This document shows positions 37,561 to 47,700 of a stretch of DNA of 64,000 nucleotides, in pieces. The notes under the pieces were generated by a model. It saw nothing but the letters and a program-made list of their open reading frames with translations, searched no databases and had not been told where the DNA came from. The stretch spans positions 310,001-374,000 of the forward strand of contig MCFH01000014.1 in NCBI GenBank assembly GCA_002104945.1. Reading direction: 5' to 3'. How positions within the stretch are numbered: position 1 is the first letter of the stretch; every line of letters begins with the position of its first letter. Source of the DNA: Piromyces finnis finn. Its lineage: Eukaryota > Fungi > Neocallimastigomycota. The translations under genes were made by a program, and so were the position numbers.

Positions 37561-38289
37561 ATACTTAAAAAATTTTAATTATAAATCAATATTTCAAATA
37601 ACACAACAATACTTTAAATACCAACTAATACTACAAATACTGTGATGATATAAATCTTAATGATTAATTATTAATACTAACAATAATTATAGTAAAAACA
37701 CTCAGTGGTGTAATACTATAAATTAGATATATTGTTTATTGCAATTTAATAAAGTGTAAAACAACTAAAAGGAACTTGGTTCCAACTAGTATAATCAATA
37801 CTATTTTATATCAAATAATTTGAAAAACACAATATACCTATATAAATATAATAAATAAGTAAATATATATATATATATATATATAAATATAATAAATACT
37901 ATTAACAATGCAATAACTAACCATGATTTGCAATAATAAGAACTAGTTAATAATTCATGAACTATTCAAAGATTTTATTACCTCTTTAAAATAATAATTT
38001 CTATTACAATAAAAAGTGAACATTTTTTTTATTATTATTCATCTTTATTATACATAATAATAATAAGTTGTGGATTCAATTTATTACTTCAATTTATTAT
38101 TATTAACGTACAAATTGTTCACGACAGATTGTTGTGGTTGTATTCTTCCTTCTTTTTCTTATTTTTAGTCACTCAAAAAAGAATAAAACTGTAGAGATGC
38201 CTTTCCAAATTTGTATGGTTTTACCAACCAATCAAGGCAAGCATTTTTTAAGAGATAAATTATATTATTTTTTAATAATCCTGTAATTA

Positions 38290-38452
38290 TTCACTTATTC
38301 ATTTATTTATTTAGTTATTTAGTTATTCACTTATTCATTTAGTTATTCATTTATTCATTCAGTTATTCACTTATTCATTCAGTTATTCACTTATTCATTC
38401 AGTTATTTATTCATTTAGTTATTTATTCATTTAGTTATTCATTTATTCATTA
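38290..38452. repeat. Degenerate TTATTCA(C/T)/AGTTATTC minisatellite
   Basis: Direct inspection. Confidence 0.85.
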
Positions 38453-39419
38453 TAAAATGTAATTTATTAATTCCTCTAGATATAAATATTTCAATAACTA
38501 TTTTAATTAAAATGTTACTTTTTAACTTTCTCATTAAACTGTTAGAATATGTGAAACGTTATGTCACATGTATTCAAATGTATTGAAATGTATTAAAACG
38601 TATTTGTATATATTGTATTTGATTATATGTTTAAGCCACAATGTAAATGTATAAATACATGTAGTTTTAGAAGAATGTAACGCAAGTAGTTCTTTATCAT
38701 AAAATATATTAATAAAGTTGACATAATTATAAACCTAAATTAAACAACTCTTAATAGATTAAGAGTCTCAATGACTCTCATGAGAGAATATCAATGACTC
38801 TCATTGACTCTCAGATGATTCTCTGAAAGATGAATCAAACCGCCGGACACAGTATGTCATAGGAGAAAACTATTGGAAACCCTAATCCCTACAATATAAG
38901 TTTTAATTGAAAATTATGAAATTTAGAGATCTAAAACTTTGAAATCTTGAAATCTCAAAAACTAAGTCACAAAATTGCCTAATTAACAATACTGACTATA
39001 TAGCGAAAGAAAACTCCGTCCAAGAAACATGGAACATTGATAATATTATACTTTAGACATAAATTAATTTATACTAAATAAAATAATTTAGATTTAGATC
39101 TTAAATTTAAGAATAAACAAACATTTAAATTTAAAAATTAAAATTTATAATTTAAATTTAAGAACAATTGAAATTCAGAAATTTAAGTTGAAATTTAAAA
39201 TTTAAAATAAATAAATTTATCCATTTTTAAAAGTAATTTAAATTTTAAACTAAACAATATGTTTATATTAGAAATAATAGAATTTCATTCTCAACTTACT
39301 TTATTCACCACAAATAGTATAAATTAGCTAATAAAATCCAAAATTTTATTTTATATAATTATTTACAATTGAGTTATTAAATTTCATCAAATATATTAAT
39401 ATTATAAATACTCCAAAGA

Positions 39420-40718
39420 ATGAGATTAAGAAGCAAAGTAATATATTTTTTAAATATTTTTTCGACAATTTTAATTCTACCATTGGTAATTGCTGAAAAT
39501 CAAAAATGTCATGTAACCAATGTCGGAACAGGTGTTTGCGTTGATGAGGATCAATGTAAATTAAATGGTAAACAAACTGGCAATGCTAAAGCATATCCAA
39601 AAATTTGTAAACATGACTCGGAAAAGATTAAATGCTGTATAAAAGATGTCGATACACTTACAGATGGAACAATTCTTCCAACAACAGGAAAATGTAAAAA
39701 TATAAATGAAGGTAACTGTTCAGAAGAATCTTACACGAGATATTTAAACCAATGCCCAGGAGATGATGTTGTTCAACTATGTGTTCCAAATACAAATCTA
39801 AATAATAATACAGATATTGATGATGTAAATTTAAATTTAAATGATAACTGTCTTGAAGTTACAGTTAGTCAAATGCTGCCAATGTTAGATCTATCATACA
39901 CAATTGCTGAAGTTACAATAAAATTTATTGAAGCGTATAAAAATTCTAGGCCATCTACATATGATTATATATCTGATTTAGCTATGGCAATTGGCCATTA
40001 TAGAGGAAAGTCTGGAAAAACAGTACCTGCAAGCAATACTCTAATTAATGAAGAAATGAAAAAGAGTTTGAAATACAAAAATATGAAAAAAGAACTAAAA
40101 AAAATAATTAAAGATAAAGTCACAGATGAAAAAATAAAAAATAAAACTGTAATAAGAAATGCAAAAAATTCAGGTAGAGGACTTTGGTGTTTAACGTTAG
40201 GAAGCTATTATGTCAATATTGATTATGCTTTTTATCCAAAATCCGGATGGAACACTGTTAAAATTCATTTTTCAGGATATGACACATGGGATTTTGAACA
40301 CATCAAAAAGGAGAAAGATCAAAATTTTCTTAAAAATTTTTGGAATGGAATAAAAACTGGAATACATAATATTCTTGATGAAGATATTCCAAGTTTTATC
40401 GCAGGAGATGGTAAAACATATGATATTACTTATGATTTTTATGACGAAGTAACTTTTTTTTATGGATACTCACCTTCAGAGTATTTTAATTTTGGGAAAA
40501 GATCTGTAGATGCATCAAGCGAAATATGTAATTTCTACACATTCAAATACATTGATACATACGACTACATTGATGAAGATGATAAAGATGAAAATGATTC
40601 TTCATTAAATAATAATGATGATTCAAACGGAACTGTAAACTTCAAATATATTTCTCTCGCAAATGTATTTATTATTTTAACGTTAGTAATGTTTTGGCAA
40701 ATAAACATTGTATATTAG
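39420..40718 (+). CDS. Secreted protein: signal peptide, two Cys-rich modules, putative colicin M-like domain, KR site and C-terminal hydrophobic (GPI/TM-like) tail
   Basis: Intact intronless 432-aa ORF. Order-conserved motifs AIGHY, LTLGS, GYDTWDFE and GDGKTYDI parallel colicin M ALAHY, YLGNI, YDDKYDFN and FSGKEYQI as recalled from memory. The ORF itself is certain; the domain call is tentative. Confidence 0.6.
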   Translation: MRLRSKVIYFLNIFSTILILPLVIAENQKCHVTNVGTGVCVDEDQCKLNGKQTGNAKAYPKICKHDSEKIKCCIKDVDTLTDGTILPTTGKCKNINEGNCSEESYTRYLNQCPGDDVVQLCVPNTNLNNNTDIDDVNLNLNDNCLEVTVSQMLPMLDLSYTIAEVTIKFIEAYKNSRPSTYDYISDLAMAIGHYRGKSGKTVPASNTLINEEMKKSLKYKNMKKELKKIIKDKVTDEKIKNKTVIRNAKNSGRGLWCLTLGSYYVNIDYAFYPKSGWNTVKIHFSGYDTWDFEHIKKEKDQNFLKNFWNGIKTGIHNILDEDIPSFIAGDGKTYDITYDFYDEVTFFYGYSPSEYFNFGKRSVDASSEICNFYTFKYIDTYDYIDEDDKDENDSSLNNNDDSNGTVNFKYISLANVFIILTLVMFWQINIVY

Positions 40719-42617
40719 AATTCTCCTAATTTACTCAATTTATTAAATTTATTAATTTGATTTTGATCTACTCACTATGTCAATTTACATTCATCATCAT
40801 TTAAAAATCCATATATTCAATTATGTAAATATTCATGAACACATAATTACATATATTTACCAATATTTCATCTTATTTTCAAAAGAACTAGTTTTATTAA
40901 CATTCATAAAATAGCATTATTGTTATTGAAAGCATAGCATACATATTTATTTCAAGTAAATAAATTGTTTGTGAAATATTCAAATACTTTAACTACTACT
41001 ATTTTAATGAGAAAATATTCTTTCCGCCATAGAGGAAAGATAGAACATAAAGAAAATACATAAAATTTATACAATTAGAAACATGAATTAGAATAATTAA
41101 ACATTATTTGATAAGTTTGTATAAAATACCCTATTGTAATGAAATTATGCAATAAACATTGAAACTATCCTTGTGAAAATGTCAATCAATTTCTTTATGA
41201 TAATTTCACTCAAATCAGTATTATATAATTTAATCCAGTATACTATTCTTTGAATTAAATCATTATAACAATACTTTAAGATAATATTTAGCCTCAAAAG
41301 CATTATTTAAATTATTGCTACCTATAAAGCAAATATATTACTGGTCAAATGCTCATCCCGTAGGCTGTTATTGCTAATATACATAGCAAATATTTCAAAT
41401 GAGGTAATTTATTAAAGTTAGAAATGCTTAGCGTGAAATGAGCATATTCTACATATATATATACTTTGAATAACCTAGCGTGAAATGGGTATATTCAATA
41501 ATATTTTAACAACTTATCATGATTTAACTTAGCGTGAAATGAGTTATATTCATAGATAATTATTAATGATGGTTTTAGACCTATATATATTTAATTTGGT
41601 CCCATCAATAACAATGTAGCACCTTCATAGTAAGGGCTCCTTAGATTTAGATGACATTGATTCATCATATTTATTTATTACCAACATTCAAGAATGTTGT
41701 GACGCCGTTTTAAAATATAATTTACGGTGATTTAGTAACCTCATATATAAATCGCCACTTTCAACGTAGTGAGTGATCGCCGACCAATTAGCTAACATTC
41801 TAATTAACCGAGCCGACTTCGATATAATTTAGAAGAACTTTATTCTCTTCAACAATCGATATTTTAAATGTCATTATCTTACAATATTAACTTGTTATAA
41901 TTTTACTGGTATATCTACTTATTTTAATTTGAAGTAAAGAAATACATAATTGAGGAATATTTTATTCATTAGTTTGATATTCACTACATTAAAATATATT
42001 ATCATGAAAATATTATTTCACTATATTTTAAAGGATAAGCAATTGAGAAAAATGAATGAAAACATTAGAATATGTTATTTATTATTTATATAGGTATTAA
42101 TACTTATCGTATATGTTATGGAAAATTATTCATTATTATGAAAATTTGATGCAAAATGAATGAAATTTTATGAAATTTAAATTTCTCTTTTTCAAATCTA
42201 AGTATTTATTACTAAACATCTAGATTTGAGGGGGAAGTAGTGAATATACGAAATTTAAAATTAAAGATAATAATTTTTGTTTCTAGTTAAACATTGGAAA
42301 TAACTAAAACATTGCATAGAAACTAAGGCTTAATAAATAGAATGAATTGAAATTCAAATTGTAAAAATTTATAAGATTCAATATGTAAAAATGAAAAGAA
42401 CAAAATTTCAAATACAAAGTAAAATATTCTTAAATATTATAAGAATAATTAATCAATACAAAAGGCATAAAAGGAAGGAAAAACACCTAAAAGAAAATGT
42501 TAAAATTCAATATACATATACTAAATAACTATTAAGGATTTAATTAAAATTTTACCATTATTAATTAGTATTTACAAATAGATTGAAATACAATTATGCT
42601 AATATTCTAAAGAAAAT

Positions 42618-42925
42618 TGTAATTATAAGGACATAAAACCAGAGAGTTATCCATAGGTTGTCCGAAGAACGTAAAACCAAGAAGATTAACCATAGGTTGT
42701 TAAGAGAACGTAAAACCAAAAAGAGTTATCCATATGTGTTGTCATAAGGACGTAAAATCAAAGGTTAACCATGAGTTGTTAAGAAAACGTAAAACCAAAG
42801 AGGTAAACCATGCGTTGTCATAAGGACGTAAAATCAAAGAGATAAACCATGTGTTATCTATAATTCTGTGTAAATCTCAGAGAGATTACCAATATAGTTT
42901 ATAGGATAATGTAAAACCGGAAGGG
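42618..42925. repeat. Degenerate tandem array of about 8 units of 38-40 bp inside the LTR element
   Basis: Recurrent TTGT...ACGTAAAA(C/T)CAA...(T/A)ACCAT. Confidence 0.85.
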
Positions 42926-44112
42926 TTTTCAATCCTTAATGGATGGTATAACAATTTATGAATATCCAATCCAAATTTTAAACTTTAATACTACCCAATT
43001 ATACAAAGGTTTTCAGTTTATCCATAAAAACGAAGTTATAGGGTAATATTTAAATTCTTTAAAGCAATTAGCGAATAATATATGTGAAATATTTTAAATT
43101 CCAATTAATGAAATATAAAAATTTTAAACATTAGATTTAGTTTATAGTTAATAGTTTAGAAATAATAAAATGCACATATTCACCAGCAAACCAAATTTTA
43201 CTTAGTAGAAAATTAGGTTTGAGGGGGAATGTTAGAATATGTGAAACGTTATGTCACATGTATTCAAATGTATTGAAATGTATTAAAACGTATTTGTATA
43301 TATTGTATTTGATTATATGTTTAAGCCACAATGTAAATGTATAAATACATGTAGTTTTAGAAGAATGTAACGCAAGTAGTTCTTTATCATAAAATATATT
43401 AATAAAGTTGACATAATTATAAACCTAAATTAAACAACTCTTAATATAAACTTTGAAAATTAATTTAAAAAATTTAATTTTGGCTTTTTTTTTTTTTTAA
43501 TATATAAAAATAAATTGATTTTTTGTTATTGTTTTATATTAAAAAATGATATTGAAGCCGCTGTTATGCTTTATTTTTATTATTCATGGAAAGGCTTTTT
43601 TTTTTTTTTAATCTATAAAATAATTATTAAAGTAAAAATAGTTTCATTGCCATATTACTCTATTTATTTTATATGAAATATGTGTTTTTTTTTTTTTTTT
43701 TTTTGAATTCTGTTAGTGTAAAAACAGGATATACAGAATTAAATAATTTTAATTAAAAAATTTATAAATTTTATAAAAGTTTAAAAAAAATTGATGAGTT
43801 TCTAAAAAACGTATTTTAATAATAAAATAATCATTATCAATAACTATATATGTTTATTCCTATTATTTTTTATATACCTTTTTTTCTTTTATACTCTTTT
43901 TTTTTTTTTTTTTTTTTAAATATCTTTAATAATCGTTAGTTTTATTATTTATCGATTTTTTTTTTTATCTGTCACAGGTAAAAATTATTTTAAATAACTA
44001 TTTTATGGTTATACAAAATATTTTCGTGTAACAAACCTCTTTTAATTATACCAAAATTGAACCTTAATTTAGGTATGACAAAATTTCATTTTCTGTTATT
44101 TTATTGGCTTAT

Positions 44113-44790
<678 letters not shown>

Positions 44791-47700
44791 AATACTTATT
44801 AAATAATAATTAATATATAATCGTCATAATATTAAAAATGCATCATTATAATTATTATAAAACCAAGCTTATCATTATAATAATTTTTTAGTTATAATAA
44901 TAATTAAAAAAAAAACTTTTCCCTATTTTTATTTAGTTTCTTTATTAAAATTAAATTCTTTTGTGGATTTCTAATTATTAAATAAACCTTTTTGTTTCAA
45001 CTATTTTCCCAAATAGTTTTAAATTTATTATTATCCGTAGTTTATGTTTTTTTTATTATTATTATGAAACATATAATTATTTTCTTTTCATCTCCACAAC
45101 GCTACTCTTACTATTTATGATATTAAATAAGCTATCTCAAACAACCTATTAAGAAATCCTTTTTTTTTTTATAATAAAAGAATAAACATTTGTTTTTTTA
45201 AATTAACAAATCAATATATATTCCTTTTTTTTTTGTATAAGGAGGTAAATAATCTTTCATAATTGAGTAGTATTAACAGTAATAACAGTAGAAGTGGTGG
45301 CAATGGTAATAGCAACAGCAGCAATAACAATTAATAAATAATAGTTCAATGGAAAAAGAATGATATGAATTTAATGAAATGAAAAAAGTTTATTTTTTAA
45401 TTTATGAATCATTTAATTTATCTAAAAGAATCTCTAATACACCTTCCTTTTATAATTAATTAAAAGTCTCTATTCAATAAAGAAATATTATCATTTTTTT
45501 TAAAAGGTCAAAATACACTATTTTTTTTTTTTAAAAAAGTCATTTTAAAGTTTTTCTTTTAATAAATATTCATTATCATATTATTAATTATTTGATTTCA
45601 TTGGTAAAAGTACATTTAATTAATATAATTTAAATAACTATTTTTTTTTACTTTATTTTATTTTGAAAAAGAAATAAATAATAAAGGTTTATTGAATAAA
45701 TAAAAAATTCAAAATAAATATGGGTATATTGATTGTGATAGTAAACTATTTATTATAATTAATTAATTATAAAATTCAATTAAGATACCATAAAATGTCT
45801 AAAAAAAAAAAGGTTTAATGGGTTATAGTGAAAGAGTGATGTATGTAATATTAATTAATTGATATTTATATATTTAAAATAAATAAAAGTAAATATTAGC
45901 ATTTTATTGTAGTTATATTTATAAGTATGACAATAATATTCTAATATACATTAATAGGTAATTAAATCTATCCATCTTTGTTTGTTAATGTCTATTTTGT
46001 TGATTTATTTCTTTTTAGAATTGTGGATTTAAAAATAGTATGAATTCTATACAGTATGCATAATAGAAATAATAATGTGTATTTGACGAACGCATACATT
46101 ATTTTTTTTTCTACCTTGCTTCATAGCATCCTTCCTTTGCTTGCCTACTATTTAAAGATTTCAATATTTAAAAAAATGTAGCATTTTAATAACTTCCTTT
46201 TATGGAAAGTTTTTTAGTATTAAAGTTTATATGATAATAAACAATATGAGTAATGATTAATTATAAACTTTAATTAATAATAAAATGCATAGAAAGATAA
46301 TGTTTAATTAAAATTAATTTTTAGATTCAAAATATACTTTAATTACAATTCATTCATATATTATTTCATATATTAATTTAAATTGAATTTAATTCAATGG
46401 AATATGACAATTTGGTATGACAAAGTGATTCAAAATTAAACTTTTAAAAAAAAATGGATCATTTTGAATAGGATAAAAAAAGATGGAGATGAGGAGGGAT
46501 GGAAGGTCATTTTTAGGTGGAGAGATTATTTTAGGAATAAGAGAAGAGGAAACTTTATAAAGATGTAAAGGAAGCATAATACATAATGGAATGAATAACT
46601 AAATGAATGAATGAATAGTTGAATGAATGATTAAATAAACATATATAAATAAATAAATAAATAAATAAAAATGATATATTGTATTTCTATAATTTAATTA
46701 ATAATGCATTCTTAATAAGAAACCTTACATATACAGAATAAACAAATGTAAGTATAGATGCATTATTTTCAATAGATATAATAATACAATACCAAACCTT
46801 TATTAACCTTCAAGAGGTTTGAGAAGGAAACTAAAGATGATTATTTGCTTTTTTTTTAGTAAAGTTGATATGATATTCTTTTACTTTTTTTTTCTTTTCT
46901 TTTAGGATTAATCCAATTTTCATTTTTTTTAATTGTGGTGTTTTTTTTTTTAAATTTCTTTTGTTTCAAAAAAGGTTGTACAATGCAATTAAAGGTATGA
47001 TCGCCTCTCTTGTGATACCATATTTATTTTGTTTAATCTTTAAATAATAACATATCTTAATGATCAGCCACAATCTATTTAGTGATGAAACATAGCATAA
47101 AACTTTTAATTAGGCATAATAATAGTAATATGAAAAACAACACCCTATAAAAAGGTCCACAGGTTCATTTTATTTTTTATATAATACCTATTATACATGT
47201 TTTTAGGCATAGAGGTATAAAAAGAAAAATGGATCAGCCATGCCTACATATAACTGAAATTTTAGAGTGGATGGCTAAATAATTTTCTTTATTAAATTTA
47301 AAAAACTTTTTTTTTTTTTATTTGATGATAAACCAGTAAAGCAGTAAAGCAACAATACTCTGCCCAACAACATTCAATTTCTAAAATGCTATTTTTTTAA
47401 GCAAAAGTTTTTCCCATCTTTTTTTTTTTTTTACCCAAAGTTCTGCCTGTTTTTTTTTTCAGACTCATCTATTCCAATATATTATTATAATATATTGGAT
47501 TAAATTCCATTTCAATTCAATTACTTTTTATTATTTCTGTTTCAAAACTATAAAAAATGAAATGACTCTAAAGTTTAATTTTAATATAATAAATTTAATT
47601 AAATAAATATATTACAATATACTGTAATATATTTATATAAAAGTATTCATTTTATTATTCATTTTATAGAAAGCCTACTGAAGAATTAATTAAAAAGCAT

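What the first reader, a model, noticed from the sequence alone, without database searches (positions are those of the whole stretch)
39420..40718. Fungal secreted protein resembling colicin M-type lipid II hydrolases
Seen: signal peptide, two Cys-rich modules, then AIGHYRGKSG...ELKKIIKD...LTLGS...GYDTWDFE...GDGKTYDI, a dibasic FGKR site and a hydrophobic C-terminus. Established, recalled from memory: the colicin M catalytic domain reads ALAHYLWGNG...IKDIIKS...YLGNI...YDDKYDFN...FSGKEYQI, with D226 essential, and it cleaves lipid II. Aligning the DF pair keeps D226 and D229 equivalents, while Y228 becomes W and H235/R236 have no clear match. Inference: a surface-anchored, Kex2-releasable antibacterial enzyme of bacterial origin, used against rumen bacteria. 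The Cys modules resemble those I recall on fungal cell-wall-lytic enzymes.
Basis: partly seen in the sequence, partly recalled or inferred. Interest (0 to 1): 0.82.

Follow-up and report, generated by a model that had tools for sequence, protein, structure and literature searches.

The report
Fungal colicin M-like antibacterial enzyme gene
A gut fungus of herbivores carries, inside a recently jumped retrotransposon-like element, a gene for a secreted protein. Its working domain has the fold and core motif of bacterial toxins that destroy the cell-wall building block lipid II, so bacterial weaponry appears to have been borrowed by rumen fungi and also by rumen ciliates.

Summary
It is 99% identical to a Piromyces finnis hypothetical protein.

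No Pfam, NCBIfam or PDB sequence search names the 170-aa C-terminal domain. Three lines of evidence still link it to colicin M (ColM):
- **Fold.** In an exhaustive alignment of its AlphaFold model against 48,161 PDB representatives, the five ColM-fold entries take ranks 1-5 (Z 5.0-7.1, 130-145 residues aligned).
- **Profile comparison.** A 92-sequence family profile aligns end to end with the ColM catalytic domain (P 7e-5). D-x-W-D-F lands on ColM D226-x-Y228-D229-F.
- **Motif limit.** The ColM H235/R236 pair is not conserved.

Bacterial relatives are C-terminal toxin domains of Rhs proteins, each followed by a small lipoprotein gene. This fits a periplasm-acting toxin with an immunity partner. 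Other relatives sit in anaerobic fungi and on telomere-capped rumen-ciliate nanochromosomes.

The N-terminal Cys modules and the C-terminal hydrophobic tail are shared with P. finnis GH24 lysozyme paralogs. A third paralog carries the tail but no Cys modules. It joins a ColM-like domain to an NlpC/P60-like domain.

The gene is the only ORF of a 4.9-kb element with identical 217-bp LTRs and a 5-bp target-site duplication.

Enzyme activity and expression are untested. I file it as a new variant of a known kind.

The parts
38535..38539 (+). Target-site duplication TAAAC, upstream copy
   Evidence: The same 5-mer follows the 3' LTR at 43447-43451.
38540..38756 (+). 5' LTR, 217 nt, starting TGTTAG
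   Evidence: It is 100% identical to 43230-43446. It is 98.6-99.5% identical to the LTRs of three other P. finnis elements.
39420..40718 (+). Intronless ORF of 432 aa, the only ORF of the element
   Evidence: It is 99% identical to P. finnis BCR36DRAFT_371635.
39420..39491 (+). Predicted signal peptide (aa 1-24)
   Evidence: Read directly from the sequence: basic n-region, hydrophobic core, VIA|EN. The same leader occurs on paralogs P0002 and P0004. No predictor was run.
39507..39782 (+). Two Cys-rich modules (C30-C73 with 6 Cys; C92-C121 with 4 Cys)
   Evidence: The AF2 model has pLDDT 91.4 and is all-beta. The modules are shared with GH24 lysozyme paralogs. Atlas shape matches fall on fungal GH24 and NlpC/P60 proteins.
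39960..40475 (+). ColM-fold domain (aa 181-352)
   Evidence: AF2 pLDDT 84.7. Foldseek, VIA-align and exhaustive VIA-align all put ColM-family structures on top. hhalign P 7e-5.
40281..40298 (+). Motif D288-T-W290-D291-F292-E293, aligned with ColM D226-K-Y228-D229-F-N
   Evidence: Across the 92-sequence family the first position is D in 64 (N in 9, E in 8). The aromatic position is W in 71, Y in 13, F in 8. The second D is D in 65 (N in 13). F is present in 89.
40497..40502 (+). Dibasic K360-R361 followed by Ser, a candidate Kex2-type cleavage site
   Evidence: A dibasic pair plus Ser at the equivalent place in P0005, P0006 and P0023. Cleavage was not tested.
40620..40715 (+). C-terminal tail (aa 401-432): small residues S-N-G, a short spacer, then a 22-residue hydrophobic end. 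Candidate GPI-attachment signal or membrane anchor.
   Evidence: The same tail occurs on P0002, P0004 and P0006. DNA homology to the paralogous elements resumes at 40617-40621. No GPI predictor was run.
40719..43229 (+). Non-coding 3' internal region of the element, with purine tract GAGGGGGAA at 43221-43229 next to the 3' LTR
   Evidence: No ORF longer than 52 aa. It is 96-98% identical in the three other elements. Sequence read.
43230..43446 (+). 3' LTR
43447..43451 (+). Target-site duplication TAAAC, downstream copy

Best explanation
The gene encodes a secreted protein of the anaerobic gut fungus Piromyces finnis. Its warhead is a distant, sequence-distinct branch of the colicin M catalytic fold.

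Proposed mechanism:
1. The signal peptide sends the protein into the secretory pathway.
2. The disulfide-rich N-terminal modules, which also sit on the fungus's GH24 lysozymes, act as a targeting or stabilising module for bacterial cell walls.
3. The C-terminal tail holds the protein at the fungal surface, either through a GPI signal or as a membrane anchor.
4. A dibasic site between domain and tail allows release by a Kex2-type protease.
5. The domain uses the acidic D-x-W-D-F site to bind a divalent cation. Like ColM, it then cleaves the phosphoester between the polyprenyl carrier and the pyrophospho-sugar of lipid II, or of a related undecaprenyl-linked envelope precursor, and so blocks bacterial wall synthesis. 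The most accessible targets would be Gram-positive rumen bacteria, whose lipid II faces outward.

The domain came from bacterial Rhs polymorphic toxins. It now rides in fungal LTR elements that carry alternative anti-peptidoglycan warheads.

Shown here: ORF, architecture, predicted fold, profile homology, bacterial Rhs and immunity-like context, presence in fungi and ciliates, and LTR element structure.

Inferred: substrate, cation use, anchoring, cleavage, expression and ecological role.
For: **Fold.** The Foldseek PDB top 13 hits are all ColM-family structures plus the B. fragilis T6SS effector BtpeA C-terminal domain (prob 0.51-0.98). VIA-align gives Z 4.9-7.8 over model residues 1-170 against ColM 119-271, and the next unrelated hit has Z 3.9. 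In an exhaustive search of 48,161 chains, ranks 1-5 are pectocin M1, BtpeA, syringacin M, PaeM and ColM with 130-145 residues aligned; later hits align 65-72. Atlas shape and feature hits include Colicin_M and DUF3289 clusters. DUF3289 has been proposed as a ColM homolog that is toxic in the periplasm (PMC11148199).

**Profile.** hhalign P 7.2e-5 end to end with the motif in register. Controls are much lower. The bacterial subset alone gives P 6.3e-5.

**Motif.** D226, Y228 and D229 are essential in ColM, and D226 is a cation ligand in its orthologs (PMC8469651). Their equivalents are the best-conserved polar positions of this family and are intact in the window protein.

**Toxin context.** Homologs end RHS-repeat proteins. 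They are followed by overlapping ORFs of 136-139 aa with lipoprotein signal sequences. This is the usual layout for a periplasm-acting toxin and its immunity protein.

**Association.** Paralogous elements carry a GH24 lysozyme, or a ColM-like plus NlpC/P60-like domain; the GH24 copies share both the leader/Cys modules and the tail, the NlpC/P60 copy the tail only.

**Independent retention.** The domain is kept in two rumen eukaryote lineages.
Against: - No sequence-level hit to Pfam Colicin_M, DUF3289 or DUF6402, even at E up to 10, and none to ColM chains in the PDB.
- The ColM H235/R236 pair, essential in ColM, has no conserved counterpart.
- Structural Z scores are middling (5-8), and the model's residues 112-150, next to the motif, have low confidence.
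- The eukaryotic subset alone aligns to ColM only weakly (P 0.009).
- No RNA evidence: the runs holding the sequence are contigs of uncertain library type.
- ColM-type enzymes need access to the outer face of the cytoplasmic membrane, and no import domain is present.
Confidence: 0.6

Rival explanations
1. The domain has the same ColM-type fold and the same bacterial toxin ancestry, but a different activity. It might attack another envelope molecule, such as an undecaprenyl-linked teichoic acid or polysaccharide precursor or a phospholipid. It might instead bind such a lipid without cleaving it.
For: The HR dyad of ColM is missing, and the family has its own conserved positions (N317, E321, P324, H193, R195). 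There is no Pfam membership. The lipoprotein immunity-like genes show only that the target is outside the cytoplasm.
Against: The acidic D-x-aromatic-D-F site essential in ColM is the most conserved polar feature and aligns in register. All characterised members of this fold that I could check in the literature act on lipid II or the cell wall.
Confidence: 0.25
2. The ORF is a passenger of a selfish LTR element with no function for the fungus. It would be a captured gene drifting towards decay.
For: It is the sole ORF of a non-autonomous LTR element with identical LTRs. The two ColM-like copies differ by 5 non-synonymous changes against 3 synonymous, plus one codon indel. Expression is not shown.
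Against: The ORF is intact in both copies, with every family-conserved residue kept. Related intact genes with varied architectures occur in other anaerobic fungi and in ciliates. The lysozyme-cargo elements share this gene's leader, Cys modules and tail, and the NlpC/P60-cargo element shares the tail, which suggests maintained modular design.
Confidence: 0.07
3. The enzyme works on the fungus's own or on other eukaryotes' polyprenyl-linked glycan carriers or cell wall. It would then be a remodelling enzyme or an anti-eukaryote toxin rather than an antibacterial one.
For: Some relatives carry chitin-binding CBM18 modules (P0023, P0033, P0046). The protein may be anchored in the fungal wall.
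Against: Bacterial homologs are Rhs toxins with exported immunity-like lipoproteins. Paralogs carry lysozyme and NlpC/P60 domains that act on peptidoglycan. The ColM review says the carrier lipid differs between organisms in the hydrogenation of its alpha-isoprenyl unit and calls this difference of great importance; from my own knowledge, not read here, this is what keeps saturated dolichol carriers from being ColM substrates. Chitin binding can equally serve to anchor the protein on the producer.
Confidence: 0.05

Closest known systems
Colicin M and ColM-like bacteriocins (PaeM, syringacin M, pectocins M1/M2; Pfam PF14859)
   Same: The predicted fold covers the whole catalytic domain. The block order matches (A-x-x-H-Y...G, LG, D-x-aromatic-D-F, G-K-x-[YF]-x-I). 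The acidic motif equivalent to D226/Y228/D229 is present. The likely target compartment lies outside the cytoplasmic membrane.
   Different: There is no detectable HMM-level similarity. Y228 is W. The H235/R236 pair is absent. There are no TonB-box, translocation or receptor domains and no Cmi-type immunity gene. The protein is eukaryotic and secreted, with Cys modules and an anchor.
ColM-fold type VI / polymorphic toxin effectors (DUF3289 T6EC1 of PMC11148199; BtpeA C-terminal domain, PDB 9jdi)
   Same: A ColM-like fold is used as a detachable C-terminal warhead of interbacterial toxins with an adjacent immunity gene. The bacterial members of this family are built the same way, on Rhs proteins.
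   Different: It is a different sequence family: no member hits PF11692 or PF19940. The window protein is delivered by eukaryotic secretion, not by a bacterial injection system. I could not find BtpeA's biochemical activity in the papers held.
Antibacterial genes transferred from bacteria to eukaryotes (GH25 lysozymes, PMC4241558; tae-derived dae amidase genes, from my own knowledge, not checked here)
   Same: A bacterial anti-cell-wall weapon is acquired by eukaryotes that live among bacteria, and it gains a eukaryotic signal peptide.
   Different: The warhead class here, a ColM fold acting on the lipid-linked precursor, has not to my knowledge been reported in eukaryotes. The gene is carried and copied by an LTR element and shares a chassis with other warheads.
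TelC, the LXG lipid II phosphatase of Streptococcus (PMC5555719)
   Same: It is a toxin acting on lipid II from outside the membrane of Gram-positive cells. This is the most plausible access route for a secreted fungal enzyme.
   Different: No sequence or fold relationship was detected or tested here. The analogy concerns mode of action only.

Membership tests
Colicin M family (Pfam PF14859, lipid II-degrading bacteriocins) | Significant match to the Colicin_M profile | tested here: not met
   No hit for the protein or for any of 92 family members, even at E up to 1-10. No ColM chain was found by phmmer or hmmsearch against the PDB.
Colicin M family (Pfam PF14859, lipid II-degrading bacteriocins) | ColM catalytic-domain fold | tested here: met
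   For the predicted model (pLDDT 84.7), ColM-family structures take ranks 1-5 of 48,161 (Z 5.0-7.1, 130-145 residues aligned). Searches agree. This rests on a prediction, not on a solved structure.
Colicin M family (Pfam PF14859, lipid II-degrading bacteriocins) | First half of the active-site motif, D-x-Y-D | tested here: met
   D288-T-W290-D291 aligns with D226-K-Y228-D229. The aromatic residue is W here and Y in 13 of 92 family members.
Colicin M family (Pfam PF14859, lipid II-degrading bacteriocins) | Second half of the motif, (x5)-H-R | tested here: not met
   The aligned positions are variable, or Y in the bacterial members. The window protein has K297-E298 at that spacing and a 14-residue insertion.
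Colicin M family (Pfam PF14859, lipid II-degrading bacteriocins) | Cleaves lipid II into undecaprenol and 1-pyrophospho-MurNAc(pentapeptide)-GlcNAc | not testable with these tools
   This needs a biochemical assay.
Colicin M family (Pfam PF14859, lipid II-degrading bacteriocins) | Bacteriocin architecture (translocation and receptor-binding domains) with a Cmi-type immunity gene | tested here: not met
   The N-terminal part is a signal peptide plus Cys modules. There is no other ORF longer than 52 aa inside the element downstream of the gene.
Rhs-type polymorphic toxin C-terminal domains | The domain occupies the extreme C-terminus of RHS-repeat proteins | tested here: met
   P0060, P0068, P0082, P0114, P0142 and P0144 have RHS_repeat followed by this domain at the C-terminus. 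This applies to the bacterial homologs, not to the window protein itself.
Rhs-type polymorphic toxin C-terminal domains | A small immunity gene lies immediately downstream | tested here: inconclusive
   Overlapping ORFs of 136 and 139 aa with lipoprotein-type leaders follow the toxin in L014 and L015. Position and export signal fit, but protection was not tested.
LTR retrotransposon (non-autonomous) | Identical long terminal direct repeats, 5-bp target-site duplication, purine tract before the 3' LTR | tested here: met
   The 217-nt LTRs are 100% identical. TSD TAAAC. GAGGGGGAA sits at 43221-43229. Two other copies have their own TSDs, ATTTT and ATTAC.
LTR retrotransposon (non-autonomous) | gag/pol genes and a tRNA primer-binding site | tested here: not met
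   No ORF other than the cargo. There is no TGG-type primer site after the 5' LTR; instead a near-palindrome spans the border. The element must be mobilised in trans.
GPI-anchored fungal surface proteins | N-terminal signal peptide plus a C-terminal omega site, spacer and hydrophobic tail | tested here: inconclusive
   The pattern is visible by eye (S-N-G, 6-residue spacer, 22 hydrophobic residues to the end) and is conserved in paralogs. No predictor or experiment was available.

The most novel reading that the evidence does not exclude
Anaerobic gut fungi would possess a eukaryotic counterpart of bacterial polymorphic toxin systems. In this reading, a family of non-autonomous LTR retroelements each carries one secreted, surface-anchored protein built on a shared chassis: leader, in most copies disulfide-rich wall-targeting modules, and an anchor tail. 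The anti-bacterial warheads are interchangeable (ColM-fold lipid II hydrolase, GH24 lysozyme, NlpC/P60). Retrotransposition and recombination between co-packaged element RNAs would copy and shuffle the arsenal. The ColM-fold warhead was taken from bacterial Rhs toxins and is also used by rumen ciliates.
Probability: 0.4. Interest if true: 0.88.

Novelty: new variant of a known kind. Interest (0 to 1): 0.72.

Why it matters
If the enzyme is active, this would be the first ColM-type toxin aimed at the lipid-linked cell-wall precursor known from eukaryotes. It would add a new weapon class to the short list of antibacterial genes moved from bacteria into eukaryotes.

It defines an unannotated domain family of about 130 representatives at 50% identity, with no Pfam model. 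That family links Rhs toxins of bacteria, anaerobic fungi and rumen ciliates.

It offers a naturally import-independent, eukaryotically secreted ColM-like enzyme. Such an enzyme is of practical interest for modulating rumen microbiota and as an antibacterial scaffold.

The LTR-element carriage, with alternative warheads built on shared leader, Cys-module and tail parts, suggests a mechanism by which a fungus can amplify and diversify its antibacterial arsenal.

Tried and rejected
- **Sequence searches.** Pfam, NCBIfam and PDB searches with the protein, the 15-sequence profile and the 92-sequence profile gave only noise.
- **Small-profile hhalign.** hhalign of the 15-sequence alignment against ColM was insignificant and out of register, so the sequence link needs the bacterial members.
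- **Related loci.** The search for related loci on the 92-sequence alignment failed because no stretch was conserved enough. No named bacterial species could therefore be assigned.
- **Cluster names.** The listing of cluster members returned no names or taxa.
- **Expression.** The only runs holding the stretch are Logan contigs whose RNA label is a guess, so expression could not be shown.
- **RNA scans.** Rfam and tRNA scans of the element found nothing.
- **Cys-module fold.** Foldseek of the Cys-module model against the PDB found nothing.
- **BtpeA.** I could not find its biochemical activity in the held literature.
- **Bacterial contamination.** Rejected. The gene has fungal AT-rich composition, is fused to fungal modules, and lies inside an LTR element with target-site duplications in a P. 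finnis assembly.
- **YDG-repeat hits.** The giant proteins P0064, P0110 and P0135 from the profile search look like spurious repeat hits. They never qualified for the 92-sequence alignment, which took only domain hits covering at least 125 profile positions, so they are in neither the alignment nor the tree.
- **Tree caveat.** The tree used the quick method and is midpoint-rooted. Group labels for 40 rows rest on composition or motifs only.
Full report
**Observation.** All quoted strings are present at residues 190, 225, 258, 286, 329 and 358, and the hydrophobic tail ends the protein. I fetched the real cma gene from plasmid pAPEC-O1-ColBM.

**No named family by sequence.** Pfam, NCBIfam and PDB sequence searches gave nothing for the whole protein. 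The word-index search found two kinds of relatives. The first kind is P. finnis GH24 lysozyme-like proteins that share only the N-terminal 125 residues (77-88% identity) and the last ~30 residues. The second kind is proteins that share a ~150-aa domain (window aa ~183-350). I aligned 15 such domains as A1. Profile searches of the PDB and per-member Pfam scans again gave only noise.

**Fold.** AlphaFold2 on A1, run without templates, gave pLDDT 84.7 and pTM 0.75. Confidence is low only for residues 112-150, an insertion peculiar to the window protein.
- Foldseek against the PDB put syringacin M, pectocin M1/M2, ColM, PaeM and the Bacteroides fragilis T6SS effector BtpeA C-terminal domain in all of the first 13 places (E 7e-3 to 0.18, prob 0.51-0.98, 0.8 or more for 10 of the 13, TM by query 0.30-0.50). 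Unrelated folds at E around 1 followed.
- VIA-align gave Z 4.9-7.8 with 127-145 aligned residues. These cover model residues 1-170 and ColM 119-271, which is the whole catalytic domain. The next hit had Z 3.9.
- The Foldseek-independent search of 48,161 representatives put the five ColM-fold representatives at ranks 1-5 with 130-145 residues aligned. Rank 6 onward aligned about 65-72 residues.
- The absolute Z values are middling, but the exclusivity and full-domain coverage make a chance match unlikely.
- ESM Atlas feature and shape searches also returned Colicin_M and DUF3289 clusters. DUF3289 has been proposed as a ColM homolog that is toxic in the E. coli periplasm (PMC11148199).

**Family and profile comparison.** An exhaustive HMM search of 1.84 billion representatives found 133 proteins. 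I aligned 92 full-length domains as A2. No member hits Colicin_M, DUF3289 or DUF6402.
- I gathered 52 ColM-family proteins with the cma catalytic domain and built a 40-sequence catalytic-domain alignment.
- hhalign of A2 against it gave probability 62.7%, P 7.2e-5, score 32.7 and 140 columns end to end. The reversed template scored 16.2. Thirty shuffled templates had mean 13.4 and maximum 20.2.
- The 60 rows outside the fungus-ciliate clade, mostly bacterial, give P 6.3e-5 on their own. The 32 rows of that clade alone give only P 0.009. The sequence bridge therefore runs through the bacterial members.
It puts D288-x-W290-D291-F292 on ColM D226-x-Y228-D229-F230.
- In the family the first position is D in 64 of 92 (N or E in 17). 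The aromatic position is W in 71, Y in 13 and F in 8. The second D is D in 65 (N in 13). F is present in 89. Further conserved positions are N317, E321 (acidic in 90 of 92), P324, H193 and R195.
- ColM H235/R236 are essential in ColM and part of its DxYD(x5)HR motif (PMC8469651). They have no conserved counterpart here.

**Bacterial relatives are Rhs toxins.** Many hits begin with the Rhs core-end motif and carry RHS_repeat or YD-shell Pfam domains, with this domain at the extreme C-terminus. On two long metagenomic contigs the toxin gene overlaps a downstream ORF of 136 or 139 aa. These two ORFs are similar to each other and start with a lipoprotein-type leader ending in Cys. An exported immunity-like protein implies a target outside the cytoplasm, as for ColM and its immunity protein Cmi.

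**Eukaryotic relatives.**
- *Fungal-type proteins.* These carry one to six copies of a Cys module and one or two copies of the domain. Some carry chitin-binding CBM18 modules.
- *Stand-alone ciliate proteins.* Proteins of about 165 aa (P0012-P0017) lie on contigs of about 810 bp from rumen metagenomes. These contigs are capped by (CCCCAAT)n and (ATTGGGG)n. That is the rumen-ciliate telomere (PMC6211341; bioRxiv 10.1101/2022.01.05.474053). They are gene-sized nanochromosomes.
- *Second ciliate group.* P0029, P0037 and P0038 have a signal peptide and a hydrophobic tail.
- *Tree.* A quick maximum-likelihood tree puts all fungal, ciliate and similar AT-rich rows in one clade (SH-aLRT 88) among Rhs-toxin clades. 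The root is at the midpoint and many labels are heuristic. A bacterial origin is therefore the parsimonious reading, not a proven one.

**Rest of the protein.** The two Cys modules fold with high confidence as one all-beta unit (pLDDT 91.4). Neither Foldseek nor the exhaustive aligner found a convincing solved counterpart. The only chain with Z of 2 or more is human beta-defensin 4, at Z 2.2. The Atlas holds the same shape at the N-terminus of several protein groups:
- Basidiomycota GH24 lysozymes (TM 0.65)
- Ascomycota VldE secreted proteins (TM 0.64)
- Mucoromycota NlpC/P60 proteins (TM 0.56)
- SH3_3 proteins (TM 0.81)

A dibasic pair followed by Ser lies 10-25 residues after the domain in the four fungal members that continue beyond it. 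The last 32 residues look like a GPI signal or membrane anchor and are shared with paralogs.

**Paralog P0006.** Its gene model is truncated. The in-frame upstream sequence supplies a signal peptide and the missing start of the domain. Its residues 150-345 are NlpC/P60/CHAP-like by structure.

**Genomic setting.**
- Perfect 217-nt direct repeats lie at 38540-38756 and 43230-43446.
- They are flanked by the 5-bp duplication TAAAC, and a purine tract sits before the 3' repeat.
- Apart from the cargo gene, no ORF exceeds 52 aa in the element's 3' internal region.
- The whole 4.9-kb unit recurs in the P. finnis assembly. L012 is 98% identical, carries the P0001 gene and has different flanks. L011 carries a GH24 lysozyme cargo. 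L013 carries a ColM-like plus NlpC/P60-like cargo.
- The LTRs are 98.6-99.5% identical across copies. The 5' part is about 76% identical in L011 and L013. The 3' 2.6 kb is 96-97% identical from position ~40617, exactly where the shared tail begins.
- L012 and L013 have their own duplications, ATTTT and ATTAC, so these are independent insertions.

**Mechanism.**
- *Shown:* architecture, predicted fold, profile homology, toxin and immunity-like context in bacteria, association with peptidoglycan hydrolase warheads, and mobility.
- *Inferred:* the domain binds a divalent cation through D288/D291 and cleaves lipid II or a related undecaprenyl-pyrophosphate-linked precursor. The Cys modules target or stabilise the protein. 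The protein is displayed on the hypha and can be released at K360-R361. The fungus needs no immunity protein because it has no lipid II. The ColM review notes that eukaryotic carrier lipids differ in the alpha-isoprenyl unit.
- *Access:* targets are most plausibly Gram-positive cells, by analogy with TelC (PMC5555719).

**Known versus new.** The protein works like, and is probably homologous to, ColM. It fails two membership criteria, the profile hit and the HR dyad, so I do not file it in PF14859. A full-text search found no paper combining colicin M with anaerobic fungi or rumen ciliates among the top-ranked results. Transfers of lysozymes into eukaryotes are known (PMC4241558).

**Limits.** There is no biochemical evidence and no expression evidence. 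The structures are predictions. Bacterial donors remain unnamed.

Noticed in passing
window 38535-43451; L011, L012, L013: The gene is the only ORF of a 4.9-kb non-autonomous LTR element with identical 217-nt LTRs, TSD TAAAC and a purine tract. Three more copies exist in P. finnis, two checked for their own TSDs, with different cargo (ColM-like, GH24 lysozyme, ColM-like plus NlpC/P60-like). All share a 96-98% identical 2.6-kb non-coding 3' part.
   Followed up: partly
window 38745-38775: The end of the 5' LTR and the first internal bases form a near-palindrome (ACTCTTAATA|GATTAAGAGT) where a tRNA primer-binding site would be expected. This may indicate self-priming.
   Followed up: no
L013:4600-6317: The annotated P. 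finnis protein BCR36DRAFT_584070 (P0006) is N-terminally truncated. The in-frame upstream sequence adds a signal peptide and the start of the ColM-like domain. Residues 150-345 look like an NlpC/P60/CHAP peptidoglycan hydrolase (Atlas TM 0.52-0.60).
   Followed up: partly
L002-L005 (about 810 bp each); L017, L018: These are complete rumen-ciliate nanochromosomes capped by (CCCCAAT)n and (ATTGGGG)n that encode nothing but a 165-aa ColM-like domain without a signal peptide. A second ciliate group has a signal peptide and a hydrophobic tail.
   Followed up: partly
window 39507-39782; P0003, P0007, P0020: The short Cys modules of related fungal proteins have spacing C-x6-C-x5-C-x8-C-x7-CC, close to the beta-defensin pattern. 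The only solved chain with Z of 2 or more to the module model is human beta-defensin 4 (Z 2.2), which is too weak to claim a relationship.
   Followed up: partly
window 39398/40730: Contigs in three public runs join 39398 to 40730, with only 21 matching letters on one side and unknown content between. The skipped stretch is the ORF plus 21 nt upstream and 11 nt downstream of it. This may come from elements with another cargo in the same frame.
   Followed up: no
P0062, P0067, P0071, P0073, P0080, P0086, P0087, P0098, P0102, P0104 (L016): A well-supported clade (SH-aLRT 99) of ColM-like proteins has short signal-peptide-like N-termini and comes from unknown organisms. L016 has 33% G+C and no ciliate telomere. 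These may be further eukaryotic acquisitions.
   Followed up: no
window 44014-44800 and 38240-38475: Long low-complexity tandem arrays flank the element, with periods of 9-15 nt and 8-12 nt. Similar arrays occur near the L012 copy.
   Followed up: no
L014:9755-14830: Downstream of the Rhs toxin and lipoprotein pair lies a second Rhs C-terminal fragment followed by several small ORFs. This looks like a typical array of orphan toxin-immunity cassettes.
   Followed up: no
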